Sequence record: PP886230.1
DNA length: 64,000 nt
Reading direction: 5' to 3' (one strand)
Both the position numbers and the translations under genes were made by a program. A model generated the notes under the pieces. That model ran no database searches, was not told where the DNA came from, and saw only the letters and a list, made by a program, of their open reading frames with translations. Within the stretch, counting starts at the first letter, position 1; every line of letters starts with the position of its first letter. Positions 1-12,722 of the stretch are shown here, piece after piece.

Positions 1-5
1 AGTAG

Positions 6-400: not shown

Positions 401-457
401 ATAGAGAGATGAGTTGCCGCAAACAATTCATTCACTCTACCTCCTGTCGTGAGACAG
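401..457 (+). ncRNA. candidate structured small RNA from the first promoter
   Basis: TTGACA(366)-16-TATAAT(388); long imperfect hairpin 402-439, then CTGTC-GTGA-GACAG (GNRA loop); no convincing ORF. Confidence 0.3.
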
Positions 458-795
458 TACAGAAAGATAGTTCCTCCAATGGGTGGTACATCTTTTTGAA
501 CCTCATATGAAAATTGTAATAACAGTACTGATATTAACAGAATGGTGTCAGTACTGATTTTAATCTAAAGCATTATGCCACCAGCACAAGCTGGTGGATT
601 CCCTCTAACAGTATTCAGTACTACATGATAGTCTTCATCCTCCTAGGGTAACATAGTGAGGGCTATGATGGCAGTACTGAATACTCCCTTTCAAAAGATA
701 GATCTATGGTATAGTACTGACGGATTTTGGGCGTAGTTACCCTGGATGGATTTTGGACGTAGATATGTCTAGCCCTCCAGAAGTCTGGAAGTAAA

Positions 796-901
796 GATGG
801 CTATCCATCTAGACGGCTAAACGGCTAGATTTCTGGATGGCTAGACGTTTGGACGGCTAAACGGCTAGATGGGTACACGTCTGGAAGTATAGACGGCTAA
901 A
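796..901. repeat. iteron-like RYGGCTAR repeat cluster (7 copies)
   Basis: GACGGCTAAACGGCTAGAT exact at 812-830 and 852-870, plus single units. Confidence 0.8.
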
Positions 902-1074
902 TCAAAATTTTATTTTGTTTTTCCAATAGTTCCCCTACCGCGTGGGGATAGTTTCCCCGCAGTATCTGAAGTTAGATTTTTCTGAATCTGGAATCATTAT
1001 CTTATAAACTGGGGGCAATGTCAACGGCCTGGCCGGATATTTTTAAAAATTTTTTCAGTACTGAATTTTGGGCG

Positions 1075-1115
1075 TAACTATGCACCCGATGGGCTTGAGT
1101 CTTTCTCGACTTGAT
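1075..1115 (-). ncRNA. CCC-ANN-GGGTG element
   Basis: motif 1083-1093 on minus strand behind TTGCTT-16-TATAAT (1149-1122). Confidence 0.4.
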
Positions 1116-1214
1116 GGAACTATTATACAGTACTGAAAAAATAAAGCAATACCCTGGAAGCAAAAAAGTTTTAATTAATTTGCTTGCTATCCTGGGCCGG
1201 ACTATGGTACTATA

Positions 1215-1270
1215 TTTCAGTACTGAGAAAGTGCGTTTACCTGCTAGGGTGCGGGAGTCTATCCTTTTTT
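1215..1270 (+). ncRNA. CCC-ANN-GGGTG element, degenerate copy
   Basis: CCTGCTAGGGTGCGGGAGTCTATCC; tail matches the 3180 copy. Confidence 0.25.
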
Positions 1271-1284
1271 TATATCTTGAATTT

Positions 1285-1330
1285 TGGACGGATCTTCCCA
1301 CCCCCTGGGGTATCCGCTTTCTCGCGTCTA
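1285..1330 (-). ncRNA. CCC-ANN-GGGTG element
   Basis: motif 1299-1309 on minus strand behind TTGACT-16-TATAAT (1365-1338). Confidence 0.4.
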
Positions 1331-1517
1331 TGTAGTAATTATACGCTTTTTCAGGATCAAGTCAATACCTAAAAACAAAATAATTGAAAATAATTTAACG
1401 CGTTTAAACGGCCCGTAACGCCCTGGATTGTTGGGAGTGGTGCAAATGTATAGCTTAGGTGTATTAATGCGTTAGAATGCGTCTGAGGCCGTTTTATGGG
1501 GTGTAGTAGTGATTTGG

Positions 1518-1610
1518 TTGATTCAGTACTGAATAATAGTACTCCTATATAGAAAGATAGTTCCCCTGGATTGATTCAGTACTGAATAATAGTACTCCTA
1601 TATAGAAAGA
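1518..1610. repeat. 40-bp direct repeat (2 copies, 53-bp period), two AGTACT sites per copy
   Basis: TTGATTCAGTACTGAATAATAGTACTCCTATATAGAAAGA at 1518-1557 and 1571-1610. Confidence 0.9.
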
Positions 1611-1724
1611 AAACTATTTTAAAAGTATTTGTAGAAAGTACTTGCACCGTACTGATAAAAGCGTATAATGTTTTACATCGAGAGCGGGAACACTTCCCGC
1701 TACACTTTAAGAGAGATTAATACG

Positions 1725-2087
1725 ATGGCAACTCAAATCACCAAAATTATTGCTAACCTGGTTAACTTCCGCGACGAGATGAAAGATCTTCCGGCGGCGA
1801 CGGTTAAAACTCACATTGACGCATACCGCGAACTGATTAAAATGCTGCCGCTTAAGCGTGAACAATACGCCGCTACCGTGATGCTTGATGCGATGATCCA
1901 TAAGATGATCGCCAGTGATTTGACGATGGTTTATCAGTATATGGGCGAAAATTTCGCGGTGTGTAGTAAGCCAGTACCAGGGATGGCAACAACTGAGGAA
2001 TTGCACGGCTTAAACTTAAAACAAGATGCATGGGATAATATGCCTCGTTTCCTGGTATGGGCTGACAGTGGCAAAATTTACAAATAA
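1725..2087 (+). CDS. hypothetical early protein
   Basis: promoter, hairpin and RBS; start moved from the promoter ATG at 1668. Confidence 0.8.
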   Translation: MATQITKIIANLVNFRDEMKDLPAATVKTHIDAYRELIKMLPLKREQYAATVMLDAMIHKMIASDLTMVYQYMGENFAVCSKPVPGMATTEELHGLNLKQDAWDNMPRFLVWADSGKIYK

Positions 2088-2182
2088 GTTTAATAAAGTA
2101 CTTGCAAACTATGTTTAATGGCGTATAATGTTTTACATCAGGTGGGGAATAGTTCCCCACTATATAAGAGGATTAAAAAAAA

Positions 2183-2422
2183 ATGGCTAAATCAAAAATG
2201 TTCTTAGGTCACAAAAACAAAACTCATTGGAATGTAAGCCTGTGGATTAATAACGATGAGGGATTGTATCGGTTGGCCCTGGACTTTATTGCCGCCAATA
2301 CTAATCGCAATGATGCGGCCCGTCATATGATGTTATTTTTAGAACAGACTGGACAAGATAAAACACCGGACGGATTCAAATATAGCACTACTGCGATCCG
2401 TGCGGCGATGGTTGGAATGTAA
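2183..2422 (+). CDS. phage hypothetical protein (WNVSLWINNDEGLY motif)
   Basis: own promoter and RBS. Confidence 0.8.
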   Translation: MAKSKMFLGHKNKTHWNVSLWINNDEGLYRLALDFIAANTNRNDAARHMMLFLEQTGQDKTPDGFKYSTTAIRAAMVGM

Positions 2423-2510
2423 TAGAATAGAATTTATTTAAAGTACTATTGCACGGGGATAGTACTTTATAATAGTGTTTTATTCATACACCAACGATAA
2501 GGGCAACAGC

Positions 2511-2777
2511 ATGAATATTAAGTATTTTGCGACGCGTGAACAAGCTCGGATCGCCGCTCGCCAGGACGGGGCAACGTTTAAAGATATGGGCGTACAATCG
2601 GAACGTGGTAAACGTTGGGCCATTGTAAAGCGTAGTACCGCCAGATCATTACAGTACTGGTTAGCGGCCTTAAAAAGTCCCGATAGTGTATCGCGTCGAG
2701 TGGTAGAAATAAAGCTCGACCGAAAGGGCAACCGCGTGACCGTGTACCGTACTAAAAAGATTGCAGTACTTGAATAA
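2511..2777 (+). CDS. hypothetical protein, paralog of 14728
   Basis: shared ATRE..AR, TFKDMG, DRKGNRVTVY. Confidence 0.8.
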   Translation: MNIKYFATREQARIAARQDGATFKDMGVQSERGKRWAIVKRSTARSLQYWLAALKSPDSVSRRVVEIKLDRKGNRVTVYRTKKIAVLE

Positions 2778-2864
2778 AAAGTACTTGCAAACTATGTTTA
2801 AAGGCGTATAATGTTTTACATCGAGAGCGGGAACTCTTCCCGCCTATAACCTGGAGTAATAAAA

Positions 2865-3095
2865 ATGACTAATATGTATATGACTGAAGTTAAAACCGTA
2901 AAAGATACTACCACGAATAAAACTACTTACTTACAGCGGATCTGTGGTGTATGGCAACGTATCAGCAAATCAAAGTACTTTAAATTAACATCATATGCAA
3001 ACCGTTCTGATTCATTCAGTACTGAAATAAAAGGTAATAAAGTACACCAATACGGCACTTATTATTATTACAGCCTGGACGCGATTGCAGTATAA
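2865..3095 (+). CDS. hypothetical early protein
   Basis: promoter cassette, GGAG RBS. Confidence 0.8.
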   Translation: MTNMYMTEVKTVKDTTTNKTTYLQRICGVWQRISKSKYFKLTSYANRSDSFSTEIKGNKVHQYGTYYYYSLDAIAV

Positions 3096-3159
3096 GCAGT
3101 TTACAAATCTTTACAATTGCCGGTATTGACTTATTTTGTCAGTACTGGCATAATGTATT

Positions 3160-3205
3160 CATTGGCAGATAAGCCGTAGCCCATAGGGTGCGGGAGTGTA
3201 TCTAT
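3160..3205 (+). ncRNA. CCC-ANN-GGGTG element
   Basis: motif 3180-3190 behind TTGACT-17-CATAAT (3126-3154). Confidence 0.45.
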
Positions 3206-3224
3206 AGAAAAATTAGTTTAGTAT

Positions 3225-3265
3225 AGTTACAATTGTGCACCCGGTGGGTTAGCTGTTGTCATGGG
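3225..3265 (-). ncRNA. CCC-ANN-GGGTG element
   Basis: motif 3238-3248 on minus strand behind TTGACA-17-CATAAT (3298-3270). Confidence 0.45.
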
Positions 3266-3379
3266 GTATATTATGCCAGTACTTGATAATGCTGTCAATA
3301 CTTTTTTTTACTATCCAGTACAGAAAACTATTTTTAAAAAGTACTTGCAAACTATGTTTAAAGGCGTATAATGTTTTAC

Positions 3380-3455
3380 ATCAGGACGGGGGAACGAAAT
3401 AAGTAACTTCCCGTTAAGTAGCCCAGGAGTAAGGCACACGAAAAACTCCCCTGAT
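3380..3455 (+). ncRNA. ~75-nt closed structured RNA candidate, copy 1
   Basis: own promoter; ATCAGG/CCTGAT closing stem; immediately followed by the next promoter. Confidence 0.5.
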
Positions 3456-3523
3456 AAAATAGTTTGACAAATGTTTTTAAAAGCGTATAATACTTACATC
3501 AACTACTGAATGAGGGTTACAAA

Positions 3524-4135
3524 ATGAAAACTATCACTACTACTACTTTCGTTATGGATTTTTCTGAATTGAACGCAGAACAAAAAACGTCAGCTATCGA
3601 ACTGGTTCGGGAACGTGAAAAAAACTCAAACGACAATTATTTTTCTGAAAGTGAAATTGAATACTATAAAGAAACAGTACTACCGGAATATGGCATTAAT
3701 GACGCTGAAATACAATTCAGTGGCTTTTGGTCCCAGGGTGACGGTGCATCAATCAGTACTGACCACGTTGACGCAGTGAAGTTTTTACGCAAGGTAAGAG
3801 CATTAACTAAGTATCGCTCAATCCGTCACTTGCTGAATGAAGATGATTTGGCGATGAGTGTAAAGCGTTCGCACTCCCACTACTCGCATGAGAATACTGT
3901 AAGCGGGTACATTGAATCGGCTTACACTGATTTAACCGCAAAACAAGAAACGTTAGTTAATGAGCTTGAGGAACTACTCACTGATACTATTCGTGAATTG
4001 TCCCGCAAGTTGTACCGTGATTTAGAGAATGCATATGAGGATCAATTCACTACTGAAAACATTACGGCACTGATTGAGGGTAACGAGTATCAATTCAATG
4101 TTATTGATGGCGTAGTGGAATCAATCGAATATTAA
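3524..4135 (+). CDS. phage/mobile-element hypothetical protein (FSGFWSQGDGA motif)
   Basis: motif recalled from MGE proteins often loosely annotated as antitoxin; function unknown. Confidence 0.75.
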   Translation: MKTITTTTFVMDFSELNAEQKTSAIELVREREKNSNDNYFSESEIEYYKETVLPEYGINDAEIQFSGFWSQGDGASISTDHVDAVKFLRKVRALTKYRSIRHLLNEDDLAMSVKRSHSHYSHENTVSGYIESAYTDLTAKQETLVNELEELLTDTIRELSRKLYRDLENAYEDQFTTENITALIEGNEYQFNVIDGVVESIEY

Positions 4136-4227
4136 TTTAAAAAGTACTTGCAAACTAAGTTTAAAAGCGTATAATACTTTATATCGAGAGCGGGAATAGT
4201 TCCCGCTACTAATGAGGAATACTACAA

Positions 4228-4392
4228 ATGAATACTTTTACCTTCGCTCAATTGAACGCCCTGGATGTATTGTCTGATGCTTTGCGGGATGCAACTGAAA
4301 GCGGTTTATTTGACAATGTTGACATTCACCCTGATGTAATTAATAATTTTTGTGATGCTATCGCAGAAGTACTGGAAGATCTAAAAAAATAA
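4228..4392 (+). CDS. small hypothetical protein (54 aa)
   Basis: promoter cassette and GAGG RBS; below ORF-track cutoff. Confidence 0.7.
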   Translation: MNTFTFAQLNALDVLSDALRDATESGLFDNVDIHPDVINNFCDAIAEVLEDLKK

Positions 4393-4480
4393 TAGAAAGT
4401 ACTTGCAATTAGTTTTTAGTACTGTATAATGTTTTACATAGAGGGGAGAAATGGTTCTCCCTGGTAATGAGGAAAATACA

Positions 4481-4702
4481 ATGGCTAATATCACTACTCT
4501 TTCCCAACTGGAAGCACTGGTTAAATCTATGCGGGAACATGCCGACAATATCGGCGTAAAAGATCCAGCCGTTTGCTTCTGCGACGAATTGAATGATGAT
4601 ACCCTGGTAATAGCAGAAGTCCAGGACGTTTCTAACTATTCCTCGCGTTACACTGGCGGCGTAGCAAATAAAGGTGACTTCTGTTTATACCTTACCAAAT
4701 AA
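4481..4702 (+). CDS. hypothetical early protein
   Basis: promoter cassette, RBS, terminator-like hairpin after. Confidence 0.8.
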   Translation: MANITTLSQLEALVKSMREHADNIGVKDPAVCFCDELNDDTLVIAEVQDVSNYSSRYTGGVANKGDFCLYLTK

Positions 4703-4754
4703 CAACGCGGGGAGATAATAACTCCCCGTTACTTTTTCAGTACTGAATCATTTA

Positions 4755-4803
4755 ATAGACGGATCTCGGCACCCGGTGGGTTAGTGACTGTTTCGTCTTG
4801 ATG
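4755..4803 (-). ncRNA. CCC-ANN-GGGTG element
   Basis: motif 4770-4780 on minus strand behind TTGACA-17-CATAAT (4837-4809). Confidence 0.45.
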
Positions 4804-4945
4804 TAGTAATTATGCCAGTACTGGATGCACTTGTCAACAACTATTTTTCAAATACTTTTTATTAAAATACTTGCTAATAGTTTTTAAACGCGTATAATGT
4901 TTTGCATAGGGGGAGCGGTTCCCCTGGTAACTAAGGAATAATAAA

Positions 4946-5182
4946 ATGCTTGAACAAATCAAATCAACGTCTGCGAATGTAACGGGAACGGTTGTACACT
5001 TTACTAGTGATGAATCGCGGGGCGTTCCCTATTGTGCTGTACATGTAAACACTGATGGCAACTACTGGTTTACGGTTTACGGATCATATTCATTTGGACG
5101 ACCAGGGCATCAAAAAATTCTGGATAAAGTACAGCCAACGGGTAAAAATATCACGGCTGAAATGTTTTATAAAAAATCATAA
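4946..5182 (+). CDS. hypothetical early protein
   Basis: promoter cassette and RBS. Confidence 0.8.
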   Translation: MLEQIKSTSANVTGTVVHFTSDESRGVPYCAVHVNTDGNYWFTVYGSYSFGRPGHQKILDKVQPTGKNITAEMFYKKS

Positions 5183-5267
5183 AGTACTTGATAATAGTTT
5201 TTAGTACTGTATAATATTTTACATCGCAAGGGGGTAATGGTTCCCCCTGGTAACTAAGGATAATCAA

Positions 5268-5567
5268 ATGAAAGTTGCATTCATCGCCCTGGCTTTATCT
5301 GTTTCCTCTTTTGCTGTTAATGCGTCGTTAGATGTAAGTAGTGAAAAATTCATTCAGTGCACTGTAGCAATGACAGATGAAAGTACTGGCGAGATTGTAT
5401 TAAAGGATCTGGAGATTCAGCCGGAAGCATTTAAAAACGGCCCGTTCCATGAAGAAGACGAAAACGGTAGCACAACAATTTATTATGATGCCAGTACTAA
5501 ACGCGGGTCGGTCACTGTTATGGATACTGAGAAAGTAACTCATACTGGCGTTATTAATTGCCGTTGA
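5268..5567 (+). CDS. exported protein with Sec-type signal peptide
   Basis: MKVAFIALALSVSSFAVNA (K, hydrophobic core, AxA). Confidence 0.7.
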   Translation: MKVAFIALALSVSSFAVNASLDVSSEKFIQCTVAMTDESTGEIVLKDLEIQPEAFKNGPFHEEDENGSTTIYYDASTKRGSVTVMDTEKVTHTGVINCR

Positions 5568-5588
5568 TAGATACTACGGGGTAACATC

Positions 5589-5819
5589 ATGACTAAGCGA
5601 ATTGTTTTACTTAACGAAAGCAGTACTACACAACTACTTAACGCCGTGCATTATGATATTGAAACGAGCGTTAATCTTATCAGTACTGTAGTACTGTTGG
5701 ACACTGGAAAGGTCGCCAATGATAAAGCGATTGCAGGTATACTAACGGATCTTGAGCCTGGTAGCAGTGCACCAATAACGTTAAATGGTAAAGTGTTTAA
5801 TATTTTACTCACTGATTAA
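5589..5819 (+). CDS. hypothetical protein
   Basis: RBS; followed by terminator. Confidence 0.75.
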   Translation: MTKRIVLLNESSTTQLLNAVHYDIETSVNLISTVVLLDTGKVANDKAIAGILTDLEPGSSAPITLNGKVFNILLTD

Positions 5820-5825
5820 GTACAT

Positions 5826-5847
5826 AGCCCACCTGGTGGGCTTTTTT
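5826..5847 (+). terminator. intrinsic terminator
   Basis: AGCCCAC-CTG-GTGGGCT-TTTTT. Confidence 0.85.
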
Positions 5848-5936
5848 GTTTTTGTAGTATCGTAGTACTGAGATACTTTGAAAATAGTTTTAAAAAAGTA
5901 GTTGACATTACCGCAGAAAAGCGTAGAATGTATTAC

Positions 5937-6009
5937 ATCAAGACGGGGAGCACTAAGTAGACCGCCAGTAAGTCGAACGAAAAACTGGACACGTCGAGAA
6001 AACTTTGAT
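5937..6009 (+). ncRNA. diverged third copy of the structured RNA, or leader of the H-NS-like gene
   Basis: ATCAA/TTGAT closing stem; shares ACGGGG, TAAGTAG, CGAAAA. Confidence 0.3.
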
Positions 6010-6050
6010 ACACTAATAAACGTAAACTAAACTTTAATTGAGGATTTATA

Positions 6051-6533
6051 ATGGCTAATGTAAAATCATTCATCAAAGCACTGGTAGCAAATGAAACTAA
6101 CGTCGCGGCTGAGATCCTGGCTGAACTGGATAACGATACCATGAAAGCGGTACGCAATAATTTTAACATCGCGTACAGTACTGCGAAAGAACTACAAGCA
6201 AATAAAGCGGCAGAAATTGAAGCGGCAAAGGCGGCCCGTGAAGCAGAACTACAAGCAACAATCGAAAGTATCCAGGCGGCGGTGTCTGGATTGGATCTGG
6301 AAGTGGTTGTGGAAATGGCACATAAAGCCCTGGCGGTTAAGTATGGTGAAGATAAGCCAGAATCTAAACCCAAAAAATGGATTCAGGAACGCGTAGCGGT
6401 AGTACTGGACAACGGGGAAGAATATCTGATTCCGGTGCGTGGTAACTGTATTGCGGTAGTACTGGACGCTATCAAAGAAAGCGGTATGACTCGCGAGGAA
6501 TGGATCGAAGCTCATCGCAAAGTTGAAGCATAA
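6051..6533 (+). CDS. H-NS/StpA-like protein with altered DNA-binding motif
   Basis: Ala/Glu coiled coil, basic linker, C-terminal VLDNGEEYLIPVRGNCIAVVLDAIKESGMTREEW aligns by eye with H-NS [34 protein letters not shown]. Confidence 0.55.
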   Translation: MANVKSFIKALVANETNVAAEILAELDNDTMKAVRNNFNIAYSTAKELQANKAAEIEAAKAAREAELQATIESIQAAVSGLDLEVVVEMAHKALAVKYGEDKPESKPKKWIQERVAVVLDNGEEYLIPVRGNCIAVVLDAIKESGMTREEWIEAHRKVEA

Positions 6534-6554
6534 CAATTAAAGTACTGAATCACT

Positions 6555-6580
6555 AGCCCACTGTATAAGTGGGCTTTTTT
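6555..6580 (+). terminator. intrinsic terminator
   Basis: AGCCCAC-TGTATAA-GTGGGCT-TTTTT. Confidence 0.85.
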
Positions 6581-6817
6581 GTGTTTATCGTTTACCAGGC
6601 CACCAGCACCGCCTAGAAACGATTCTAACGCATTAAACGGATTATCTGATGCATTGCCCTAGCTGGTGGCGTTAAGGCTGTAAGAACGCGATTGAGAGCG
6701 TTTAAAGTATTTTGCAAAAAGTAATAAAAAGTACTTGAACGATTAAGAGATTAGCGTATAATGTTTTACATCGAGAGGGGGAAACGGTTCTCCTTCCAAA
6801 TCAAAGGAATCAAAACA

Positions 6818-7045
6818 ATGGCTATTATCATTACTCGCGTATCTGGTACTACTGGCAACGAACAAGTAGTTGCAGTCATTACGAACAAGGCAGGTGCGGA
6901 ATTGCAAAATGCAATGAATACCTGGGCCGTTAATGAGTTCGGTCAGTGGGCAAGTGTAGCATACATTGAAACCTATCAAGTGCCGTCGATTAGTTTAACT
7001 GATTTGGGCGTTGAGCGTATCCTTTGCCTTGATGAATTAAATTAA
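6818..7045 (+). CDS. hypothetical early protein
   Basis: promoter cassette; start moved from 6761. Confidence 0.8.
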   Translation: MAIIITRVSGTTGNEQVVAVITNKAGAELQNAMNTWAVNEFGQWASVAYIETYQVPSISLTDLGVERILCLDELN

Positions 7046-7130
7046 AAAAGTACTTGCAAAGTAAATCGAATAAAGTATAATACATTACATCAAGGGGAGA
7101 AATGGTTCTCCCCACTACAAGGAAACTAAA

Positions 7131-7343
7131 ATGGCTATCATTACTAAAATCAAAGTTAGTAAATCACTGGTTAAACTTGAAGAAGTGAAAGAAGGTTATA
7201 AAGTATCTTGGTGCGGTATGTATCGGACGTTCGCAGATATAGATGATGCGATCAATTATTACACTGACACGGTTAAAAACTTTGTTCGTGCTGATGTGGT
7301 TATGGCAGTGGCAACATATAAAGCATCAAAAGAAAGTAAGTAA
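7131..7343 (+). CDS. hypothetical protein, weakly similar to 10287 and 11198
   Basis: Y.VS.G....T.....A..YY pattern. Confidence 0.75.
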   Translation: MAIITKIKVSKSLVKLEEVKEGYKVSWCGMYRTFADIDDAINYYTDTVKNFVRADVVMAVATYKASKESK

Positions 7344-7424
7344 AAATATTATCACAGTACTATTGACATAGTTTGATAGTACTGGCATAATAACTTTTAT
7401 CAAGACAACTAAGAGGAAATTAAA

Positions 7425-7769
7425 ATGGCTAACATCAATACTATAGCAGCACAAAATATCAACCTGTCTTCTGTTGAAGTTGTACATATTGCCGCTCGGC
7501 GTTGGTTCCAGGCTTCATATGGTAACACTTATTTCTCTTTAAGTGTAGACGTAGAAATTGATGGTAATTTTATTGAAGTAGTAAACGTGCCGTTCCAATA
7601 TGGATACGGGGATCATTTTGACACTGTAGCAATGGAAGAATTTAGCAAGGTTATTAATATGGAAGGTAAAGAGTTTTTACGCGGTTCTTATCTTTCCCGT
7701 TTTTGCCGTGATAATAATATCACTGTTTATAGTTCTGTTAGTGATGTTAAACGCAAAAAAGATCTTTAA
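7425..7769 (+). CDS. hypothetical protein, paralog of 14309
   Basis: shared RW...GNTY.S, F.YGYG, DVKRKKD. Confidence 0.8.
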   Translation: MANINTIAAQNINLSSVEVVHIAARRWFQASYGNTYFSLSVDVEIDGNFIEVVNVPFQYGYGDHFDTVAMEEFSKVINMEGKEFLRGSYLSRFCRDNNITVYSSVSDVKRKKDL

Positions 7770-7849
7770 TTAGCTTTACTTTATGCAGATACTTTGATAT
7801 AGTGTCTGCATAGGGGAAAGAAATTAAATTAACTTAAGAGGATAGTATA

Positions 7850-8119
7850 ATGAAAAATATCAGTACTTTAATCGATGCAGGTACTCATGTTCGTCGGTCT
7901 ATGGTTGCAACCAGTACTACAAAACAAGTAGCGAGCGGTTATCTTGTATTTGTGCACGATGGTAAACTCCTGGAACGTTCAATCAATTTTGATGTTAAAA
8001 ACAATTGCCGTTTTATTATCTTTAAGCGTGAGCAATATAAAATTGATTTACCAGCAAAGCCCATTAGTGGGGCGTACAACGTGCAATCATTGTTTGAACG
8101 TCAACCATACACCTATTAA
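7850..8119 (+). CDS. hypothetical protein
   Basis: GAGG RBS. Confidence 0.75.
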   Translation: MKNISTLIDAGTHVRRSMVATSTTKQVASGYLVFVHDGKLLERSINFDVKNNCRFIIFKREQYKIDLPAKPISGAYNVQSLFERQPYTY

Positions 8120-8170
8120 TCAAAACATCGTTAGCGGTCGATTCAGGCCGCTTATATTGGGGATTATACC

Positions 8171-8443
8171 ATGAACGTTAATCAAGTACTGAATGAGATC
8201 GAAAGCATCATTAAACCGATGAAGCGTACTGATGCTATGTTAACACCGGAAGAATGCCGCCTTTATGAGCGTTACAGCGTCGAACAAGTCCAGGCAATGG
8301 CTATGGCTACCCCAGCCGTTAAACCGCCTGAGAATGCGTTACAGGACGTTACAGGGGATTATATCATCAATCCAGTACTAGGGAAGATGGCTGCAATCAC
8401 CGAAGATCAACAAGACTACTTAAGCCAGTACTTAAAAGGTTAA
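8171..8443 (+). CDS. hypothetical protein
   Basis: RBS, in series. Confidence 0.7.
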   Translation: MNVNQVLNEIESIIKPMKRTDAMLTPEECRLYERYSVEQVQAMAMATPAVKPPENALQDVTGDYIINPVLGKMAAITEDQQDYLSQYLKG

Positions 8444-8448
8444 TTAAT

Positions 8449-8658
8449 ATGCTTACTGTACAGGATAAGATCGACATCTTAAAGGTTAATATGTATGTGA
8501 TTGATGCAGAACCTGGTAAAGTATTTGCATACGATGATAGTACTGTAAGCGATTTCTACTATAGCCAGGCCGTGGGGGATCTTTCTGTACAGTCGGTTAT
8601 TGAAAACGTAGTTAATGCAGCGTATGAGCATTTACTTTCAAATAGTACTTGCAATTAG
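8449..8658 (+). CDS. hypothetical protein
   Basis: in series with upstream gene. Confidence 0.7.
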   Translation: MLTVQDKIDILKVNMYVIDAEPGKVFAYDDSTVSDFYYSQAVGDLSVQSVIENVVNAAYEHLLSNSTCN

Positions 8659-8728
8659 TTTTTAAACGCGTATAATGTTTTACATCGAGAGCGGGAATAG
8701 TTCCCGCCTCACTTTTAAGGAATATGAA

Positions 8729-8875
8729 ATGAAAGCATCAAAAAAGAGTACTAACAAGAAAGCACGTTCAACCTTAGATGGGGTATTCCCTTTACGTTTC
8801 GTTGATGAAGTGGTTTCCTACCCGCCTGGCCTTACTCCTGAGATGGTAGAAAGTTTGCGTAAATCTAAAAAATAG
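8729..8875 (+). CDS. small basic hypothetical protein
   Basis: promoter cassette; start moved from 8675. Confidence 0.7.
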   Translation: MKASKKSTNKKARSTLDGVFPLRFVDEVVSYPPGLTPEMVESLRKSKK

Positions 8876-8956
8876 TACTTGCAATTAGTTTTTAGTACTG
8901 TATAATGTTTTACATGAAGGGGAGAAATGATTCTCCCCAATAACAGGAGAAACAAA

Positions 8957-9109
8957 ATGAAACAATACAACGCTCGGTTTGATGTTACTATCGGTAACGG
9001 CAAAGGTCAATTCTCTTTCAGTACTCGCCGCAGTTATACAGAAAACTTCCTGCGTAATTGTGCATTGACCGCCGCTCAAATTAAACATTATTTTCAGGCT
9101 AAAAAATGA
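8957..9109 (+). CDS. small hypothetical protein
   Basis: promoter cassette, AGGAG RBS. Confidence 0.7.
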   Translation: MKQYNARFDVTIGNGKGQFSFSTRRSYTENFLRNCALTAAQIKHYFQAKK

Positions 9110-9195
9110 GATCATTAGCTTATTACAGTTCGGCCCTGGTCGGTGCATTGATCGCGGCGTTGTTAGTAACCTATCTATTCTTTATGGTGATTTAA
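9106..9195 (+). CDS. 29-aa membrane peptide
   Basis: ATGA-coupled; ALVGALIAALLVTYLFFMVI. Confidence 0.5.
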   Translation: MRSLAYYSSALVGALIAALLVTYLFFMVI

Positions 9196-9333
9196 ATGAA
9201 TCCTAACGGTATAATTTACAGTACTCCTAAAACGAAAGCAGACAAGGTAAACGCTAAAAAAGCGAAAGTAAAGGAGTACATCAAACAAGGAATGACACGA
9301 AAGGCGGCGATTCTAAAAGCTAAAAATAAATGA
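9196..9333 (+). CDS. 45-aa lysine-rich peptide
   Basis: adjoins upstream ORF; ends before terminator hairpin. Confidence 0.55.
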   Translation: MNPNGIIYSTPKTKADKVNAKKAKVKEYIKQGMTRKAAILKAKNK

Positions 9334-9374
9334 AAAAGTGGTTGACTTCGGTCAGCCATTTTGCTATTATATAT

Positions 9375-9422
9375 TCATTGAGAGATAGCTCACTAGCCCA
9401 CAGGGTGCAGGAGTGTATCTAT
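9375..9422 (+). ncRNA. CCC-ANN-GGGTG element
   Basis: motif 9397-9407; -35 (9342) lies inside a UUCG terminator-like hairpin. Confidence 0.45.
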
Positions 9423-9553
9423 TGTATAATGTTTGAGTACTGAAAACTATTTTAAAGTATTTGATAAAAAGTACTTGCAAACTATCTCAATAAGCGTATA
9501 ATGTTTTACATCGCAAGGGGAAACGGTTTCCCCTAGTAATAAGGAAACGAATC

Positions 9554-9895
9554 ATGACTATCTCAATTGCTCAATCTAACTTTGAAAATGAAATCATCGC
9601 CCAGGCACTGCGTTTAAATGATGGTCGGGCCGAAATCAATTACGGTTTCAATTCAGGCGGTTGTGAAAAATATCAGTACTTTGTAACGGCTGATGGCGGT
9701 GTACTGGGCATCAATACAGTTATTGTAAACATACAGAAAATTAATTTCAATGATCCAGACGATAGCCAGTTTTACATCACTGGCGTAGACGTGAACTATG
9801 AGGATGACTCACTAACTGATGACCACACTGGCGAGAAGTTAGAAAGTGCATACGGTGAAGATGATTATCAGTCCGGTCCAGAAGATTTCGAATAA
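9554..9895 (+). CDS. acidic hypothetical protein (DVNYED..L.DDHTG..LESAYG)
   Basis: promoter cassette and RBS. Confidence 0.8.
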   Translation: MTISIAQSNFENEIIAQALRLNDGRAEINYGFNSGGCEKYQYFVTADGGVLGINTVIVNIQKINFNDPDDSQFYITGVDVNYEDDSLTDDHTGEKLESAYGEDDYQSGPEDFE

Positions 9896-9991
9896 TATTA
9901 AAAAATAGTTTGACAATAGATTATAGTACTGTATAATAGTTTACATCAAGGGGAGAAAAACTTCTCCCCACTAACAGAGAGAGAAAACAAA

Positions 9992-10204
9992 ATGGCTAAT
10001 ATCCGGTCGAAATTAAAAAATGCAAAACAAGTTTTATTTTCAGATCATGAATACTTTAATAAAGATATTACAGGAGTTACAAGTATCAAGGAAGTAAAAG
10101 AAAAAACCGGCGTTTTGTGTGATGTGCGATTAGTTGGGACATTTGGGAATAACGTGCTATATCGCTGTGGTGATTACAATTTTACACTGACTATCATTAA
10201 CTAA
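9992..10204 (+). CDS. hypothetical early protein
   Basis: promoter cassette. Confidence 0.8.
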   Translation: MANIRSKLKNAKQVLFSDHEYFNKDITGVTSIKEVKEKTGVLCDVRLVGTFGNNVLYRCGDYNFTLTIIN

Positions 10205-10286
10205 AAATATTATCACAGTACTATTGACATAGTTTGATAGTACTGACATAATAACTTTTATCAACTACACTACTAAGGAATTAAAA

Positions 10287-10466
10287 ATGGCTATCATCGC
10301 AAAAACTGAAATCATCGGCCTGGATTCTATCATCATGACGTTTGAAGATCAAAAAGGTATGTATGTGGTTTCCTATGGTGATTATGTTCGGGAGTATGAA
10401 ACGGTAGACGAAGCCTTTGAAAGTTACATTCGCCAGGTGAATAAAGCATACGACGACTACCGCTAA
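10287..10466 (+). CDS. small hypothetical protein (59 aa)
   Basis: promoter and AAGG RBS; related to 7131. Confidence 0.7.
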   Translation: MAIIAKTEIIGLDSIIMTFEDQKGMYVVSYGDYVREYETVDEAFESYIRQVNKAYDDYR

Positions 10467-10565
10467 AATATATTACCAGTACTATTAAAGATATTGACAA
10501 CGTTTGATAGTACTGTATAATAAGTTTTATAAACAGTAGTTAACTTAACCTAAGAGAGAAATAAA

Positions 10566-10709
10566 ATGATCGCACTGGATTCATTCATCGACGCAGTACT
10601 GGCAAAAACTGGCGAGGATCTGACCGCAGAACAATACGCGATGATCGAACAATGTCAACAGGACGGTAAATCGGTGAAAGATACTGTTAAGATTATCCGC
10701 AAGATGTAA
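10566..10709 (+). CDS. small hypothetical protein (47 aa)
   Basis: own promoter; terminator-like hairpin after. Confidence 0.65.
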   Translation: MIALDSFIDAVLAKTGEDLTAEQYAMIEQCQQDGKSVKDTVKIIRKM

Positions 10710-10814
10710 GATTATAGCCCACTGGTTAACGCTGGTGGGCTTTAATTCATTACCCTATACAATGCCAGTACTAAACCGTTTATCTCGTTAGAATGCGTTA
10801 CAGGACGTTTACCA

Positions 10815-11012
10815 ATGATTAGCATGAAATCAGTACAAAAACAAATAGAAACATTATCAAAAATTAAACGTAAACAGTACTCCTTAGAATATACAATCAA
10901 TGGTAACTATCATCTAATGAAAGAAAATAATTTTATAGTCATTGATGAATCATTGCAAATCATTAGTATAGTACTGAAAGCATTAATCAATGACAGAAAA
11001 AAATTAAAATAA
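10815..11012 (+). CDS. hypothetical protein
   Basis: ORF track; weak RBS. Confidence 0.55.
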   Translation: MISMKSVQKQIETLSKIKRKQYSLEYTINGNYHLMKENNFIVIDESLQIISIVLKALINDRKKLK

Positions 11013-11049
11013 ACTATTGACAATATCATCCAGCACTGGCATAATACTT

Positions 11050-11098
11050 ACACCAAGACGAGAACGTCACTAACCCATAGGGTGCACAAATGTAACTG
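11050..11098 (+). ncRNA. CCC-ANN-GGGTG element
   Basis: motif 11074-11084 behind TTGACA-17-CATAAT (11017-11045). Confidence 0.45.
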
Positions 11099-11132
11099 TA
11101 TAATATTGATCAAAAAATGATCTGATCAATAC

Positions 11133-11160
11133 TTGATCAATTTGCGTAAAGTAGTATAAT
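11133..11160 (+). promoter_or_regulatory. promoter with GATC in the -35, inside a cluster of four GATC sites
   Basis: TTGATC-16-TATAAT; GATC at 11108, 11119, 11124, 11135. Confidence 0.5.
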
Positions 11161-11197
11161 TCTATGCAGTTGGTTAGACGAAAGGTTATGATTAGTA

Positions 11198-11344
11198 GTG
11201 CAAGTGTATAAAAATTTTCATGGTGTATCGTTCCGCACATATGGGGATGAATATGTGGTATCATGTGGATTGGAAAAAGTAAGAACAAGTAATATTATTG
11301 TCGCATTACAGTACTATAGTATTTTTATAATGAGGTTAAAATAA
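11198..11344 (+). CDS. small hypothetical protein (GTG start, or 1-nt frameshift from ATG 11188)
   Basis: TAATG-coupled to the TraR-like gene; YVVSCG pattern as in 7131/10287. Confidence 0.45.
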   Translation: MQVYKNFHGVSFRTYGDEYVVSCGLEKVRTSNIIVALQYYSIFIMRLK

Positions 11345-11601
11345 TGGCTGTAGGATTCGCGAAAGATGGGGCCGAGCAAGACGAGATTAACGCAGTGATT
11401 CAGGCCGCCGTTAACCACGCTAGAAAGCAAATTAACGCACAAATAGAATCACTGATACATTGCCTCGACTGCGGCGATATAATCCCTGAGAAACGACGCC
11501 AGGCCGTTAAGGGATGTAAGTACTGCATAACTTGCCAGGAGGATCATGATAGTACTTTTAAACGTCCCCCGCGTAATTGTTGGCATAGATCTATGAGATA
11601 A
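11344..11601 (+). CDS. DksA/TraR-family C4 zinc-finger protein (YbiI/TraR-like)
   Basis: GFAKDGAEQDEI N-terminus; CLDCGDIIPEKRRQAVKGCKYCITCQ. Confidence 0.9.
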   Translation: MAVGFAKDGAEQDEINAVIQAAVNHARKQINAQIESLIHCLDCGDIIPEKRRQAVKGCKYCITCQEDHDSTFKRPPRNCWHRSMR

Positions 11602-11664
11602 AAAGTATTGACAGTACTGAAAGATAGTGTATAATGTTTTATATCTTAACTGAGGATAGTAATC

Positions 11665-12021
11665 ATGGGAATACAACATATCACGCGTACTACTGACAAT
11701 GGCGAGATCACTGGCTATCAAGTACAGGGCAAAGTAGCACAATTGCAGTACTGGTTTGTGAAACGTGGAATCATTGCACCGGATCTTGATTATGACCGTG
11801 TAGCGTTTATTGATTCTCTTTATGTTGATCCTGATAGTCGGGGCAATGGTGAAGGTAACGAATTAATGAATGCCTTTATTGATGCCGCCGATGATTCAGA
11901 TTGTATCATTTTAGAATGCGATACGGGAGAAGATAACGCCTTTAATCTTAAAGAATGGTACGAAGGTTTCGGATTCGAGGTACTGATCGATAGTGAATAT
12001 CCTATCATGATTTTATCATAG
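11665..12021 (+). CDS. GNAT-family acetyltransferase
   Basis: IDSLYVDPDSRGNGEG (motif A), LKEWYEGFGF (motif B); own promoter. Confidence 0.85.
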   Translation: MGIQHITRTTDNGEITGYQVQGKVAQLQYWFVKRGIIAPDLDYDRVAFIDSLYVDPDSRGNGEGNELMNAFIDAADDSDCIILECDTGEDNAFNLKEWYEGFGFEVLIDSEYPIMILS

Positions 12022-12099
12022 TACTTGCATTTAGTTTTCAGTACTGTTATAGTACTTGCATCAAGGGGAAACATCTTCCCCTACTAAGAGGAAATAAAA

Positions 12100-12288
12100 A
12101 TGGAAAACTTATCAAGTATTTTAGTACAAGATGATTTCGGTAATCCTGGAAGTGCTATCATTGTTCGGGGTAATAAAGCAACGTTTGTTATTGCTGGTGG
12201 ACCAGTACAGCGTAGCATTAAAAATAATGCTGTTACCATTAATAATGTACGCTATCGCTTAGATAAAGAATTGATTCATAAACTGTAA
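12100..12288 (+). CDS. hypothetical early protein
   Basis: promoter cassette. Confidence 0.75.
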   Translation: MENLSSILVQDDFGNPGSAIIVRGNKATFVIAGGPVQRSIKNNAVTINNVRYRLDKELIHKL

Positions 12289-12315
12289 TATTAATTTAAT
12301 AGAGGATAACAATAA

Positions 12316-12639: not shown

Positions 12640-12722
12640 AAACTATTGACAATGCAACCCAGTACTGTATAATAGTTTACATGAAGGGGAGAAATGATTC
12701 TCCCCACTGAGAGGAAAGAAAA

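What the first reader, a model, noticed from the sequence alone, without database searches (positions are those of the whole stretch)
6051..6533. Early H-NS-like protein whose QGR DNA-binding motif is replaced
Seen: a coiled-coil N-terminal half, a KPESKPKK linker and a C-terminal block that aligns by eye with the H-NS DNA-binding domain (NGE, G, AV...A..E.G, terminal aromatic). TWTGQGRTP is replaced by LIPVRGNCI. It has its own promoter and terminator. Known: the Q/RGR motif inserts in the AT-rich minor groove; oligomerisation-only H-NS variants such as H-NST are dominant negative; T7 gp5.5 and T4 Arn/MotB counter H-NS. Inference: a phage anti-silencer that co-oligomerises with host H-NS to keep the AT-rich phage genome transcribable, or a nucleoid protein with new specificity, possibly for AGTACT.
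Basis: partly seen in the sequence, partly recalled or inferred. Interest (0 to 1): 0.7.

Follow-up and report, generated by a model that had tools for sequence, protein, structure and literature searches.

The report
Phage-encoded H-NS-like early protein
A giant E. coli phage carries, in its predicted early gene region, a divergent copy of the bacterial DNA-silencing protein H-NS whose DNA-reading loop has the Gly-Asn form used by the Pseudomonas silencer MvaT, so it probably changes how the host's silencing machinery treats the AT-rich phage genome.

Summary
The ORF (window 6051-6533, +, 160 aa) is real. It is conserved across Rak2-like jumbo phages of Enterobacterales and lies in the 20.1-kb direct terminal repeat of Escherichia phage vB_EcoM_E9.1. 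It has its own sigma70-type promoter and terminator.

The H-NS likeness holds:
- hhalign of the family against H-NS gives 87% probability (reversed control 1.8%).
- The AlphaFold model has the H-NS topology.
- The 19 best Foldseek matches in Swiss-Prot are all H-NS or StpA.
- The best PDB matches for the C-terminal domain are the DNA-binding domains of MvaT, Ler and H-NS.
- A GenBank note on the Klebsiella phage Muenster orthologue already records an HHpred hit to StpA.

QGR is indeed replaced, but not by a degenerate loop. Gly131-Asn132 is invariant in the family and matches Gly99-Asn100 of MvaT's "AT-pincer". The DNA-binding domain aligns across the whole family with no length variation, unlike the helical half. 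This argues against an oligomerisation-only poison.

However, the basic linker and lysine network are missing: the C-terminal half has net charge -3, against +4 to +6 in H-NS, StpA and Pmr. DNA affinity is therefore uncertain.

Best reading: a self-assembling H-NS-family protein that competes with or remodels host H-NS on phage DNA. The function is inferred and untested. In passing, AGTACT is 10- to 30-fold over-represented and sits on early promoters.

The parts
5826..5850 (+). Intrinsic terminator of the upstream gene (hairpin 5826-5842 plus T-run). It insulates the unit from read-through.
   Evidence: sequence
5902..5929 (+). Sigma70-type promoter, TTGACA-16 nt-TAGAAT, preceded by an A-rich stretch (ttaaaaaagtag). 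Predicted transcription start near 5936.
   Evidence: 11 of 12 matches. The same module sits upstream of the orthologues in other genera.
5937..6050 (+). Leader of about 115 nt with a GAGG Shine-Dalgarno at 6040-6043. No significant structure. The annotated CDS0019 (5902-6030, TTG start) overlaps the promoter and leader and is probably not a gene.
   Evidence: z +1.09
6051..6533 (+). CDS for a 160-aa H-NS-family protein (CDS0020, XDC03241.1). An identical second copy lies in the right terminal repeat, at record positions 353795-354277.
6051..6344 (+). Residues 1-98: helical oligomerisation-type domain (a1 2-12, a2 16-23, long a3 28-77, turn G80-L-D82-L83, a4 83-98). This is the same helix order as the H-NS N-terminal domain.
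   Evidence: AF2 model. Foldseek aligns the full length to H-NS and StpA. hhalign covers H-NS residues 31-83. The Rak2-type orthologue hits Pfam Histone_HNS_N at E 2e-4, below the curated cut-off. Atlas features.
6345..6389 (+). Residues 99-113: flexible linker that includes KPESKPKK. Net charge about +1, against about +5 for the H-NS linker.
   Evidence: pLDDT dip and absence of secondary structure. The +1 and +5 figures were hand-counted from the printed sequences; computed only the whole C-terminal halves.
6390..6515 (+). Residues 114-155: H-NS/MvaT-type DNA-binding-domain fold (b1 114-118, b2 124-128, loop 129-134, helix 135-144, helix 148-155). R114 is near-invariant and sits at the start of b1.
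   Evidence: (C against C, 72%)
6438..6446 (+). Codons for R130-G131-N132, the loop that replaces Q112-G113-R114 of H-NS. G-N is invariant across the family and corresponds in position to Gly99-Asn100 of MvaT.
   Evidence: PMC4466236
6555..6582 (+). Intrinsic terminator of the unit (8-bp stem, 5-nt loop, T-run).
   Evidence: In the downstream sequence of each orthologue a hairpin with a T-run can be read by eye; that script did not score terminators.
1..20107 (.). Context: the left direct terminal repeat of the phage genome. It is identical to record positions 347745-367851. It is a dense array of small + strand genes, most with their own sigma70-like promoter.
   Evidence: Terminal repeats of about 20-21.5 kb are annotated or reported for relatives.

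Best explanation
The gene encodes a divergent, full-length member of the H-NS family, carried by a strictly lytic jumbo phage (Asteriusvirus; Rak2-like clade). The family is present throughout that clade.

Shown:
- It has the H-NS domain order: a helical N-terminal domain with a long central helix and a helix-turn-helix at G80-x-D82-L83, then a flexible linker, then a beta-beta-alpha-alpha C-terminal domain.
- It is a monocistronic unit with a near-consensus sigma70-type promoter and its own terminator.
- It lies in the 20.1-kb direct terminal repeat, so each genome carries two copies.
- The QGR loop of H-NS is replaced by x-Gly-Asn. Gly-Asn is invariant, and a near-invariant Arg (R114) sits at the N-terminal edge of the domain.

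Inferred:
- Host RNA polymerase makes the protein immediately after DNA entry.
- It self-assembles through its N-terminal domain.
- Its C-terminal domains probably still read the minor groove of AT/TpA-rich DNA in an MvaT-like way. Asn would stand in for the last Arg of the AT-hook, and an Arg from the N-terminal arm or R130 would complete a pincer.
- Because its linker and domain are not basic, it should bind less tightly and less indiscriminately than H-NS.
- The most likely job is to occupy or remodel H-NS/StpA nucleoprotein on the very AT-rich phage DNA (31-39% GC in this window; host about 51%). That would keep phage promoters usable, in the manner of Ler or a competing paralogue, not a truncated dominant-negative.
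For: Identity and distribution:
- The window is the first 64 kb of PP886230.1.
- The family is restricted to Rak2-like phages of Escherichia, Klebsiella, Salmonella, Erwinia and Serratia and to metagenomes. Only 12 clusters were found among 1.84 billion representatives.

Homology to H-NS:
- BLASTP against H-NS is colinear, E 0.003.
- hhalign of the family against H-NS gives 84-87% probability and E 4e-6 over about 101 columns, spanning H-NS residues 31-136. Controls score 0.1-1.8%.
- For calibration, H-NS against MvaT scores only 13.8%.
- The AF2 model (pLDDT 82.9) has the H-NS topology.
- The top 19 Foldseek hits in AFDB Swiss-Prot are all H-NS, StpA or plasmid H-NS, with probability 0.89-0.97 and alignments over residues 1-151. 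The next hit drops to 0.2.
- For the DNA-binding-domain model, rank 1 of 48,161 PDB representatives is the MvaT C-terminal domain bound to DNA (2mxf; Z 3.7, 2.8 A over 44 of 47 residues). Rank 3 is the Ler C-terminal domain bound to DNA. Foldseek's rank 1 in PDB is the H-NS DNA-binding domain 1hnr.
- Atlas features: the N-terminal part resembles Histone_HNS_N clusters, and the C-terminal part resembles MvaT_DBD and Histone_HNS clusters.

Functional loop:
- G131 and N132 are invariant and R114 is near-invariant.
- The MvaT AT-pincer is Arg80 plus Gly99-Asn100, with Asn in the place of the last Arg of Q/RGR. N100A impairs MvaT function (PMC4466236).

Early expression:
- Promoter and terminator.
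- The terminal repeat is full of sigma70-like promoters.
- Terminal-repeat genes are early in PA5oct.
- CBB's small-gene region with RpoD-like promoters is thought to be early.

AT-richness.
Against: - No curated model reaches threshold. Pfam Histone_HNS is not hit at all. Histone_HNS_N is hit only by the Rak2-type orthologue, at 21.5 bits against a cut-off of 24.5.
- HMMER profile searches against PDB find no H-NS.
- Structural Z-scores for the 57-residue domain are low in absolute terms (3.7, 2.4 and 2.0).
- The C-terminal half is neutral to acidic across the family (net -4 to +2; E9.1 -3, pI 5.1), against +4 to +6 (pI 9.6-10.2) in H-NS, StpA and Pmr.
- The lysines that form MvaT's lysine network and the KK of the H-NS helix are absent in the E9.1 protein. 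Strong DNA binding is therefore not assured.
- Nothing tested here shows DNA binding, oligomerisation, timing of expression or any effect on silencing.
- Metatranscriptome contigs were uninformative.
Confidence: 0.5

Rival explanations
1. Dominant-negative poison of host H-NS. The N-terminal domain co-oligomerises with host H-NS/StpA, and the altered, non-basic C-terminal domain lowers the DNA avidity or bridging of the mixed filaments. Silencing of the phage genome is relieved in the manner of H-NST.
For: - H-NS-like helical topology and a conserved site-2-like turn, GLDLE against DGIDP.
- A non-basic linker and domain.
- The Q/RGR motif is absent.
- All known hosts of the family are Enterobacterales, which carry H-NS (general knowledge).
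Against: - Sequence similarity of the N-terminal half to H-NS is weak: hhalign N against N gives 5%, about 19% identity, limited to H-NS residues 51-81.
- The length of the central helix varies by tens of residues within the family. That is unexpected if it had to fit host filaments, whose H-NS is expected to be nearly invariant across these hosts (general knowledge, not measured here).
- The C-terminal domain carries two of the four invariant residues (Gly-Asn) and aligns without length variation. That is unexpected for a vestigial domain.
- H-NST-type antagonists simply lack the domain (PMC7074111).
Confidence: 0.2
2. Stealth or defence-silencing paralogue, like Sfh of R27 or the role proposed for the H-NS of phage EPV1. 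The phage supplies extra H-NS-like protein. That way the entry and replication of about 350 kb of AT-rich DNA does not titrate host H-NS off H-NS-repressed loci such as CRISPR-Cas and defence islands. Alternatively, the protein represses such loci directly.
For: - Full-length architecture with a conserved DNA-binding loop.
- A very AT-rich, very large genome.
- Precedents are reviewed in PMC7074111.
Against: - The non-basic C-terminal half suggests it is not a simple substitute for H-NS.
- No evidence on its targets.
- A lytic infection may be too short for titration effects to matter (inference).
Confidence: 0.13
3. Phage-specific chromatin or temporal switch that reads AGTACT. The protein nucleates at the hyper-abundant AGTACT palindromes, which overlap the -35 element and the spacer of many terminal-repeat promoters. 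It then spreads by oligomerisation and shuts off or organises the early region.
For: - AGTACT is the most over-represented hexamer: 133 observed against about 6 expected in the terminal repeat, and 117 against about 11 in the rest of the window.
- The same is true of all five relatives examined, all of which carry the protein family.
- It sits at -5 (11 of 41) and +15 (14 of 41) relative to the -35 element of terminal-repeat promoters.
- The motif has a central TpA step, and MvaT-type readers favour TpA and tolerate G/C (PMC4466236).
Against: - Co-occurrence within one clade is not independent evidence.
- A small minor-groove domain is a poor candidate for reading a 6-bp palindrome with two G-C pairs.
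- The residue before Gly-Asn varies (R, S, T, K, N) while the motif stays invariant.
Confidence: 0.1
4. Not an H-NS relative. It is a coiled-coil protein with a small alpha/beta domain, and the resemblance is chance or convergence. The function is unrelated to DNA.
For: - No curated family or PDB sequence hit reaches threshold.
- Foldseek against PDB is not significant.
- Long helices give generic matches.
- The C-terminal half is acidic.
Against: Several largely independent methods point to the same family, domain by domain and colinearly. Negative controls are clean.
Confidence: 0.05

Closest known systems
H-NS / StpA of Enterobacterales (Pfam Histone_HNS_N PF22470 plus Histone_HNS PF00816)
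   Same: - Same domain order and secondary-structure topology over the full length.
- Colinear profile match to H-NS residues 31-136 (87%).
- Shared residues: NGE in the hairpin, the loop Gly, AV..A..E.G, and a terminal aromatic residue.
- A site-2-like turn.
- These are the best Foldseek hits in Swiss-Prot.
   Different: - Q-G-R is replaced by x-G-N.
- The linker is not basic.
- The C-terminal half has net charge -3 against +4 to +6.
- Below Pfam thresholds; about 20% identity.
- The first 40 or so residues show no detectable profile similarity.
- Encoded by a lytic phage as a predicted immediate-early gene.
MvaT / MvaU / Pmr of Pseudomonas (MvaT_DBD PF22055; PDB 2mxf)
   Same: - Gly-Asn at the tip of the DNA-reading loop, where H-NS has Gly-Arg.
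- An Arg in the N-terminal arm of the domain.
- Best structural match in PDB for the C-terminal domain (Z 3.7, 44 of 47 residues).
- The nearest Atlas feature clusters for residues 100-160.
   Different: - No significant sequence or profile similarity (hhalign 0.2-3.4%).
- The lysine network (K81, K83, K97, K102, K105, K108) is not conserved.
- The N-terminal half resembles H-NS more than MvaT.
- The Gly-Asn loop is therefore a parallel solution within the H-NS lineage and not evidence of MvaT ancestry.
Ler (LEE-encoded regulator; PDB 2lev)
   Same: - An H-NS-type C-terminal domain on a different, self-associating N-terminal coiled coil.
- Acts as a counter-silencer by competing with H-NS on AT-rich DNA.
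- Third-best PDB structural match.
   Different: - Ler keeps the RGR motif and is basic.
- It is chromosomal or island-encoded and is not a phage early gene.
H-NST, the truncated H-NS antagonist of the serU island
   Same: A horizontally acquired H-NS-family protein that relieves silencing.
   Different: H-NST has only the N-terminal domain. Here the C-terminal domain is present and carries two of the four invariant residues of the family.
Sfh (R27), Acr2, Pmr (plasmids) and the H-NS of phage EPV1: mobile-element-encoded full-length silencer homologues
   Same: Full-length H-NS-family proteins carried by AT-rich mobile DNA. Proposed stealth or defence-modulating roles.
   Different: - Those are canonical in sequence, pass Pfam and keep QGR (or, for Pmr, the MvaT motif with its lysines).
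- tblastn with E. coli H-NS found no canonical H-NS in 50,697 phage records, apart from one mislabelled Salmonella contig.
T7 gp5.5, T4 Arn and MotB, LUZ24 Mip: phage anti-silencer proteins (general knowledge)
   Same: A possible shared purpose: protecting AT-rich phage DNA from xenogeneic silencing early in infection.
   Different: These are unrelated folds that bind H-NS or MvaT or mimic DNA. None is itself an H-NS homologue.

Membership tests
H-NS family (PF22470 + PF00816) | Sequence match to the curated family models at their thresholds | tested here: not met
   - Histone_HNS is not hit by any of the 27 family members at E<=1.
- Histone_HNS_N is hit by 2 members, best at 21.5 bits against a cut-off of 24.5.
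- Profile-profile comparison is positive, however: hhalign 84-87%, E 4e-6 to 8e-6.
H-NS family (PF22470 + PF00816) | N-terminal helical oligomerisation domain: a1-a2-long a3-turn-a4, giving two dimerisation sites | tested here: inconclusive
   - The predicted topology is identical.
- Foldseek aligns residues 1-151 to full-length H-NS and StpA at probability 0.89-0.97.
- Atlas features point to Histone_HNS_N.
- N-against-N profile similarity is weak: 5%, site 2 only.
- Oligomerisation itself was not tested.
H-NS family (PF22470 + PF00816) | Flexible, positively charged linker that contributes to DNA binding | tested here: not met
   A linker is present (low pLDDT and no secondary structure at 99-113). 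Its net charge is only about +1, hand-counted from the sequence. The whole C-terminal half is -3, against +4 for H-NS and +6 for StpA.
H-NS family (PF22470 + PF00816) | C-terminal beta-beta-alpha-(3-10/alpha) DNA-binding fold | tested here: met
   - AF2 models.
- Top PDB matches are 2mxf (MvaT) and 2lev (Ler) by VIA-align.
- 1hnr (H-NS) is the top match by Foldseek.
- hhalign C against C gives 72%.
- Absolute scores are modest because the domain is about 45 residues long.
H-NS family (PF22470 + PF00816) | Q/RGR AT-hook-like motif in the loop after strand 2 | tested here: not met
   The loop is R130-G131-N132 here and x-G-N across the family. The last Arg is always Asn.
H-NS family (PF22470 + PF00816) | Binds AT-rich DNA and silences or bridges it | not testable with these tools
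   Needs EMSA, PBM, ChIP and reporter assays.
MvaT/MvaU family (PF22055) | AT-pincer: Gly-Asn in loop 2 plus an Arg from the N-terminal arm (Arg80, Gly99, Asn100) | tested here: inconclusive
   Gly-Asn is met and invariant. A near-invariant Arg (R114) lies at the start of strand 1. Counting back from Gly-Asn, it falls within 2-3 residues of MvaT positions 80-83 (PMC4466236). No residue-level superposition was available.
MvaT/MvaU family (PF22055) | Lysine network contacting the DNA backbone (K81, K83, K97, K102, K105, K108) | tested here: not met
   Aligned positions in the E9.1 protein are mostly non-basic. For example, the helix after the loop reads AVVLDAIKE, against HKTLKEWK in Pmr. Net charge is -3 against +5.
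MvaT/MvaU family (PF22055) | Sequence or profile similarity to MvaT proteins | tested here: not met
   - hhalign of the family against a 7-member MvaT alignment gives 3.4% (full length) and 0.2% (C-terminal domain only).
- BLASTP against Pmr gives E 8.5.
H-NST-type truncated antagonists | N-terminal domain only; no DNA-binding domain | tested here: not met
   A complete C-terminal domain is present and holds two of the four invariant residues of the family.

The most novel reading that the evidence does not exclude
An H-NS-fold protein has been re-tooled by a clade of jumbo phages into a phage-specific chromatin protein. Its invariant Gly-Asn loop, on a non-basic domain, would recognise the AGTACT palindromes that are 10- to 30-fold over-represented in these genomes and that sit on the -35 element and spacer of the early promoters. 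Oligomerisation from these sites would then switch off or organise the terminal-repeat early region. That would be a virus-encoded, sequence-nucleated silencing system acting on the virus's own genome.
Probability: 0.1. Interest if true: 0.8.

Novelty: new variant of a known kind. Interest (0 to 1): 0.5.

Why it matters
Xenogeneic silencing by H-NS is a first-line barrier to AT-rich foreign DNA. Known phage countermeasures, such as T7 gp5.5, T4 Arn/MotB and LUZ24 Mip, are unrelated small binders or DNA mimics.

Here a whole clade of strictly lytic, roughly 350-kb, AT-rich phages carries a full-length but strongly diverged H-NS homologue in its predicted early region, twice per genome. If it competes with or remodels host H-NS filaments, it would be a Ler-like counter-silencer invented by phages.

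The protein is also a natural experiment in H-NS DNA recognition. An H-NS-lineage domain has adopted the MvaT-type Gly-Asn loop while shedding the basic linker. That allows a direct test of how much of AT-rich DNA recognition lies in the loop and how much in electrostatics.

Practically, these phages are being developed against E. coli O157, APEC and Klebsiella. Knowing their host-takeover genes helps predict host range and resistance.

Tried and rejected
Sequence searches that found no H-NS link:
- Pfam, NCBIfam and PHROGs scans of the protein and of 27 relatives gave no threshold hit. PHROGs lists only unknown-function families: phrog_27871 (its own family) and phrog_20181 (the longer relatives).
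- phmmer and a profile hmmsearch against PDB sequences found no H-NS.
- An exhaustive phmmer search and a profile word search of the large protein collections found only phage or metagenome relatives. No bridging sequence carried an H-NS Pfam domain.

Structure searches that were uninformative:
- Foldseek of the full-length model against PDB gave nothing significant, because PDB holds only isolated H-NS domains.
- VIA-align of the full-length model returned only generic long-helix matches.

Ideas tested and rejected:
- MvaT ancestry of the domain is rejected. Profile comparison with Pmr or MvaT is at noise level, while comparison with H-NS is clearly positive (against 40).
- My first recollection, that MvaT has a contiguous R-G-N motif, was wrong. 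The paper shows Arg80 plus Gly99-Asn100.

Other negative results:
- Expression evidence from public RNA runs is uninformative. Only fragmentary metatranscriptome or metagenome contigs of relatives were found, with no direction and no ends.
- Rfam found no hits in the terminal repeat.
- The leader has no significant fold.
- tblastn with E. coli H-NS against 50,697 phage records found no canonical phage H-NS.
- Literature searches on jumbo phages, Asteriusvirus, phAPEC6, CBB, fEgEco12, Muenster and RaK2 found no description of this protein.
Full report
WHAT AND WHERE. The window is the first 64 kb of Escherichia phage vB_EcoM_E9.1 (PP886230.1, 367,851 bp). It is a Rak2-like jumbo myovirus and its closest relatives are classified as Asteriusvirus. 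The ORF at 6051-6533 (+) exists exactly as described: 160 aa, ATG start, GAGG Shine-Dalgarno at 6040-6043. GenBank calls it a hypothetical protein. Window positions 1-20107 are identical to record positions 347745-367851. This is the long direct terminal repeat, so the gene occurs twice per genome, with the second copy at 353795-354277. Relatives have annotated or experimentally supported repeats of 20-21.5 kb. GC content is about 39% in the repeat and 31-34% beyond it.

TRANSCRIPTION UNIT. A hairpin with a T-run ends the upstream gene at 5826-5842. A near-consensus sigma70-type promoter follows at 5902-5929 (TTGACA-16-TAGAAT, 11 of 12 matches). A second hairpin with a T-run at 6555-6575 ends the unit. 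The leader of about 115 nt has no significant fold. Orthologues in vB_Ec-M-J, Klebsiella phage Muenster, Salmonella phage SE_PL, Serratia phage BF and a 362-kb contig each have a similar promoter module (ttaaaaaagta[G/C]-TTGACA/G), and a hairpin with a T-run can be read in the printed downstream sequence of each. The repeat holds 41 such + strand promoter-like sites. In the related phage PA5oct, RNA-seq shows that terminal-repeat genes are early (10.1101/679506). For phage CBB, the small-gene region with RpoD-like promoters was proposed to be early (PMC5259590). "Early" is therefore well supported by inference but was not measured for this phage. Public RNA runs gave only uninformative contigs.

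THE FAMILY. Close homologues (70-98% identity) occur in Asteriusvirus phages. More distant ones (25-54%) occur in Klebsiella, Salmonella, Erwinia and Serratia jumbo phages and in metagenomes. An exhaustive HMMER search of 1.84 billion representatives found only 12 clusters. Across 27 sequences, four columns are invariant: G80, K97, G131 and N132. Near-invariant columns are F38, A45, E66, D82, L83, R114, G122 and I152. The length of the central helix varies by tens of residues, whereas the C-terminal domain aligns without length variation.

IS IT H-NS-LIKE? Curated libraries say nothing at threshold, and HMMER against PDB sequences finds no H-NS. Several independent lines still converge on H-NS.
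- hhalign of the family against an H-NS/StpA alignment gives 84-87% probability and E 4e-6 to 8e-6 over about 101 colinear columns, covering H-NS residues 31-136.
- In my controls, reversed H-NS scores 1.8% and cross-domain pairs score 0.1-0.2%. C against C scores 72%. N against N scores 5%, covering only the site-2 region.
- As a yardstick, H-NS against MvaT, which are accepted structural relatives, scores 13.8%.
- The Rak2-type orthologue hits Pfam Histone_HNS_N (E 2e-4, 21.5 bits against a cut-off of 24.5), with residues 18-70 matching profile positions 13-65.
- The AlphaFold2 model (pLDDT 82.9) has helices at 2-12, 16-23, 28-77 and 83-98, a disordered stretch at 99-113, strands at 114-118 and 124-128, a loop at 129-134, and helices at 135-144 and 148-155. 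This is the H-NS order of elements.
- Foldseek against Swiss-Prot AlphaFold models returns H-NS, StpA or plasmid H-NS as all 19 top hits, with probability 0.89-0.97 and alignments over residues 1-151. The next hit drops to 0.2.
- A model of residues 104-160 alone was compared with 48,161 PDB representatives without Foldseek. Rank 1 is the MvaT C-terminal domain bound to DNA (2mxf; Z 3.7, 2.8 A over 44 of 47 residues). Rank 3 is the Ler C-terminal domain bound to DNA (2lev). Foldseek's top PDB hit is the H-NS DNA-binding domain 1hnr, which is not significant on its own.
- Language-model features place residues 1-100 next to Histone_HNS_N clusters and residues 100-160 next to MvaT_DBD and Histone_HNS clusters. 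These are leads only.
- The annotators of Klebsiella phage Muenster recorded for the orthologue [quoted passage not shown]. That accession is StpA.
I conclude that it is a divergent H-NS-family protein (probability about 0.9), closer to H-NS proper than MvaT is.

THE LOOP. [9 protein letters not shown] aligns with LIPVRGNCI, giving Q112>R130, G113=G131 and R114>N132. The Gly-Asn pair is invariant across the family, while the residue before it varies (R, S, T, K, N). In the MvaT-DNA structure, Gly99-Asn100 "function as half of the AT-hook". Asn100 takes the conformation of the last Arg of Q/RGR, and Arg80 from the N-terminal arm completes an "AT-pincer". R80A and N100A impair function (PMC4466236). 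Pmr and MvaT sequences show K-G-G-N in that loop. The phage family also has a near-invariant Arg (R114) at the start of strand 1. Counting back from Gly-Asn, it falls within 2-3 residues of MvaT positions 80-83. I could not obtain a residue-level superposition. The loop therefore looks functional and MvaT-like, although the family shows no profile similarity to MvaT (0.2-3.4%). This points to a parallel solution inside the H-NS lineage.

WHAT SPEAKS AGAINST ORDINARY DNA BINDING. The linker plus domain has net charge -3 (pI 5.1) in this protein and -4 to +2 across the family. The corresponding values are +4 (pI 9.6) for H-NS, +6 for StpA and +5 for Pmr. The basic H-NS linker and the MvaT lysine network are not conserved. 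If the protein binds DNA, it should do so more weakly or more selectively, relying on oligomer avidity.

MECHANISM (inference). The protein is made by host RNA polymerase at once after DNA entry. It self-assembles through an H-NS-like helical domain, and its domains probe the minor groove of AT/TpA-rich DNA. The phage DNA (31-39% GC) is a prime H-NS substrate in hosts with 51-58% GC. The most economical role is to compete with or remodel H-NS/StpA filaments so that phage promoters stay accessible, in a Ler-like way. I rate hetero-oligomeric poisoning lower, for three reasons. The N-terminal similarity to H-NS is weak. The helix length is variable. The C-terminal domain is conserved. A stealth or defence-silencing role, as for Sfh or as proposed for EPV1 H-NS (PMC7074111), is also possible.

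AGTACT. AGTACT is the most over-represented hexamer, with 133 observed against about 6 expected in the repeat and 117 against about 11 in the rest of the window. The excess is 18- to 32-fold in the equivalent regions of Muenster, vB_Ec-M-J, SE_PL, BF and the 362-kb contig. Sites occur in all three codon phases and are denser between genes. They cluster at two positions in the repeat's promoters: overlapping the upstream edge of the -35 element (11 of 41) and in the spacer just before the -10 element (14 of 41). Whether this protein reads the motif cannot be decided here. Co-occurrence within one clade is weak evidence, and a small minor-groove domain is not an obvious reader of a palindrome with two G-C pairs.

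NOVELTY. Phage- and plasmid-encoded H-NS, MvaT and Lsr2 homologues are known (PMC7074111). tblastn with H-NS found no canonical copy in 50,697 phage records. This family has escaped Pfam and has no paper in the searchable library. Its only trace is a GenBank note for one orthologue. It is a new variant of a known kind: H-NS lineage, MvaT-type loop, non-basic C-terminal half, and a predicted immediate-early gene of lytic jumbo phages.

Noticed in passing
window 1-64000, densest in 1-20107: AGTACT (often CAGTACTG) is hugely over-represented. The terminal repeat has 133 sites against about 6 expected, and the rest of the window has 117 against about 11. The same 18- to 32-fold excess is found in the equivalent regions of Klebsiella phage Muenster, vB_Ec-M-J, Salmonella phage SE_PL, Serratia phage BF and a 362-kb contig. 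Sites occur in all three codon phases and are about 2.5 times denser between genes, so this is a DNA-level signal.
   Followed up: partly
window 366-18772 (41 promoter-like sites on the + strand): In the terminal-repeat promoters, AGTACT sits at two fixed places. It overlaps the upstream edge of the -35 element (AGTAC-TTGCAA; 11 of 41), and it lies in the spacer just before the -10 element (AGTACTG-TATAAT; 14 of 41). This looks like an operator or a promoter sub-element. The H-NS-like gene's own promoter has AGTAG there and no spacer copy.
   Followed up: partly
window 1-20107 and about 20100: The left direct terminal repeat ends at 20107. It is identical to record positions 347745-367851. GC content drops from about 39% inside the repeat to 31-34% beyond it.
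   Followed up: yes
window 9342, 13380, 16371, 18631; and 13954, 14224, 16799, 18772: Near-identical promoter cassettes recur. One group is TTGACT-ccggtcagtccctttgc-TATTAT (the copy at 9342 differs in the spacer). The other is TTGACA-aagtat(c/a)t(t/c)agtactg-TATAAT (the copy at 18772 has GATAAT), with three of its four copies sharing the leader start agtttacatcaa. This suggests duplicated promoter-leader modules in the early region.
   Followed up: no
window 5902-6030 (+) and 6625-6717 (-): The annotated small CDSs CDS0019 (TTG start, overlapping the promoter and leader of the H-NS-like gene) and CDS0021 (antisense in the downstream spacer) are probably not genes.
   Followed up: partly
window 6585-6735: The unusually long spacer after the gene folds into a moderately stable structure with a 9-bp stem, GCCACCAGC/GCUGGUGGC (z -1.97). 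Its first 75 bases or so are nearly identical in vB_Ec-M-J, the only part compared. There is no Rfam match. Orthologues in other genera are also flanked by long non-coding stretches of 400-600 nt.
   Followed up: partly
window 11344-11601 and 11665-12021: The terminal repeat also encodes a DksA/TraR-type zinc-finger protein (Pfam E 1.6e-10) and a GNAT acetyltransferase (E 4e-9). Both are plausible host-takeover factors acting on RNA polymerase or host proteins. Eight other repeat proteins scanned had no Pfam match.
   Followed up: partly
L008 3055-3666 (Klebsiella phage Muenster); possibly window 3524-4135: Muenster annotates a YeeU-like antitoxin of the same length (612 bp) and relative position as E9.1 CDS0012. 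The E9.1 protein has no Pfam hit, and orthology was not checked.
   Followed up: no
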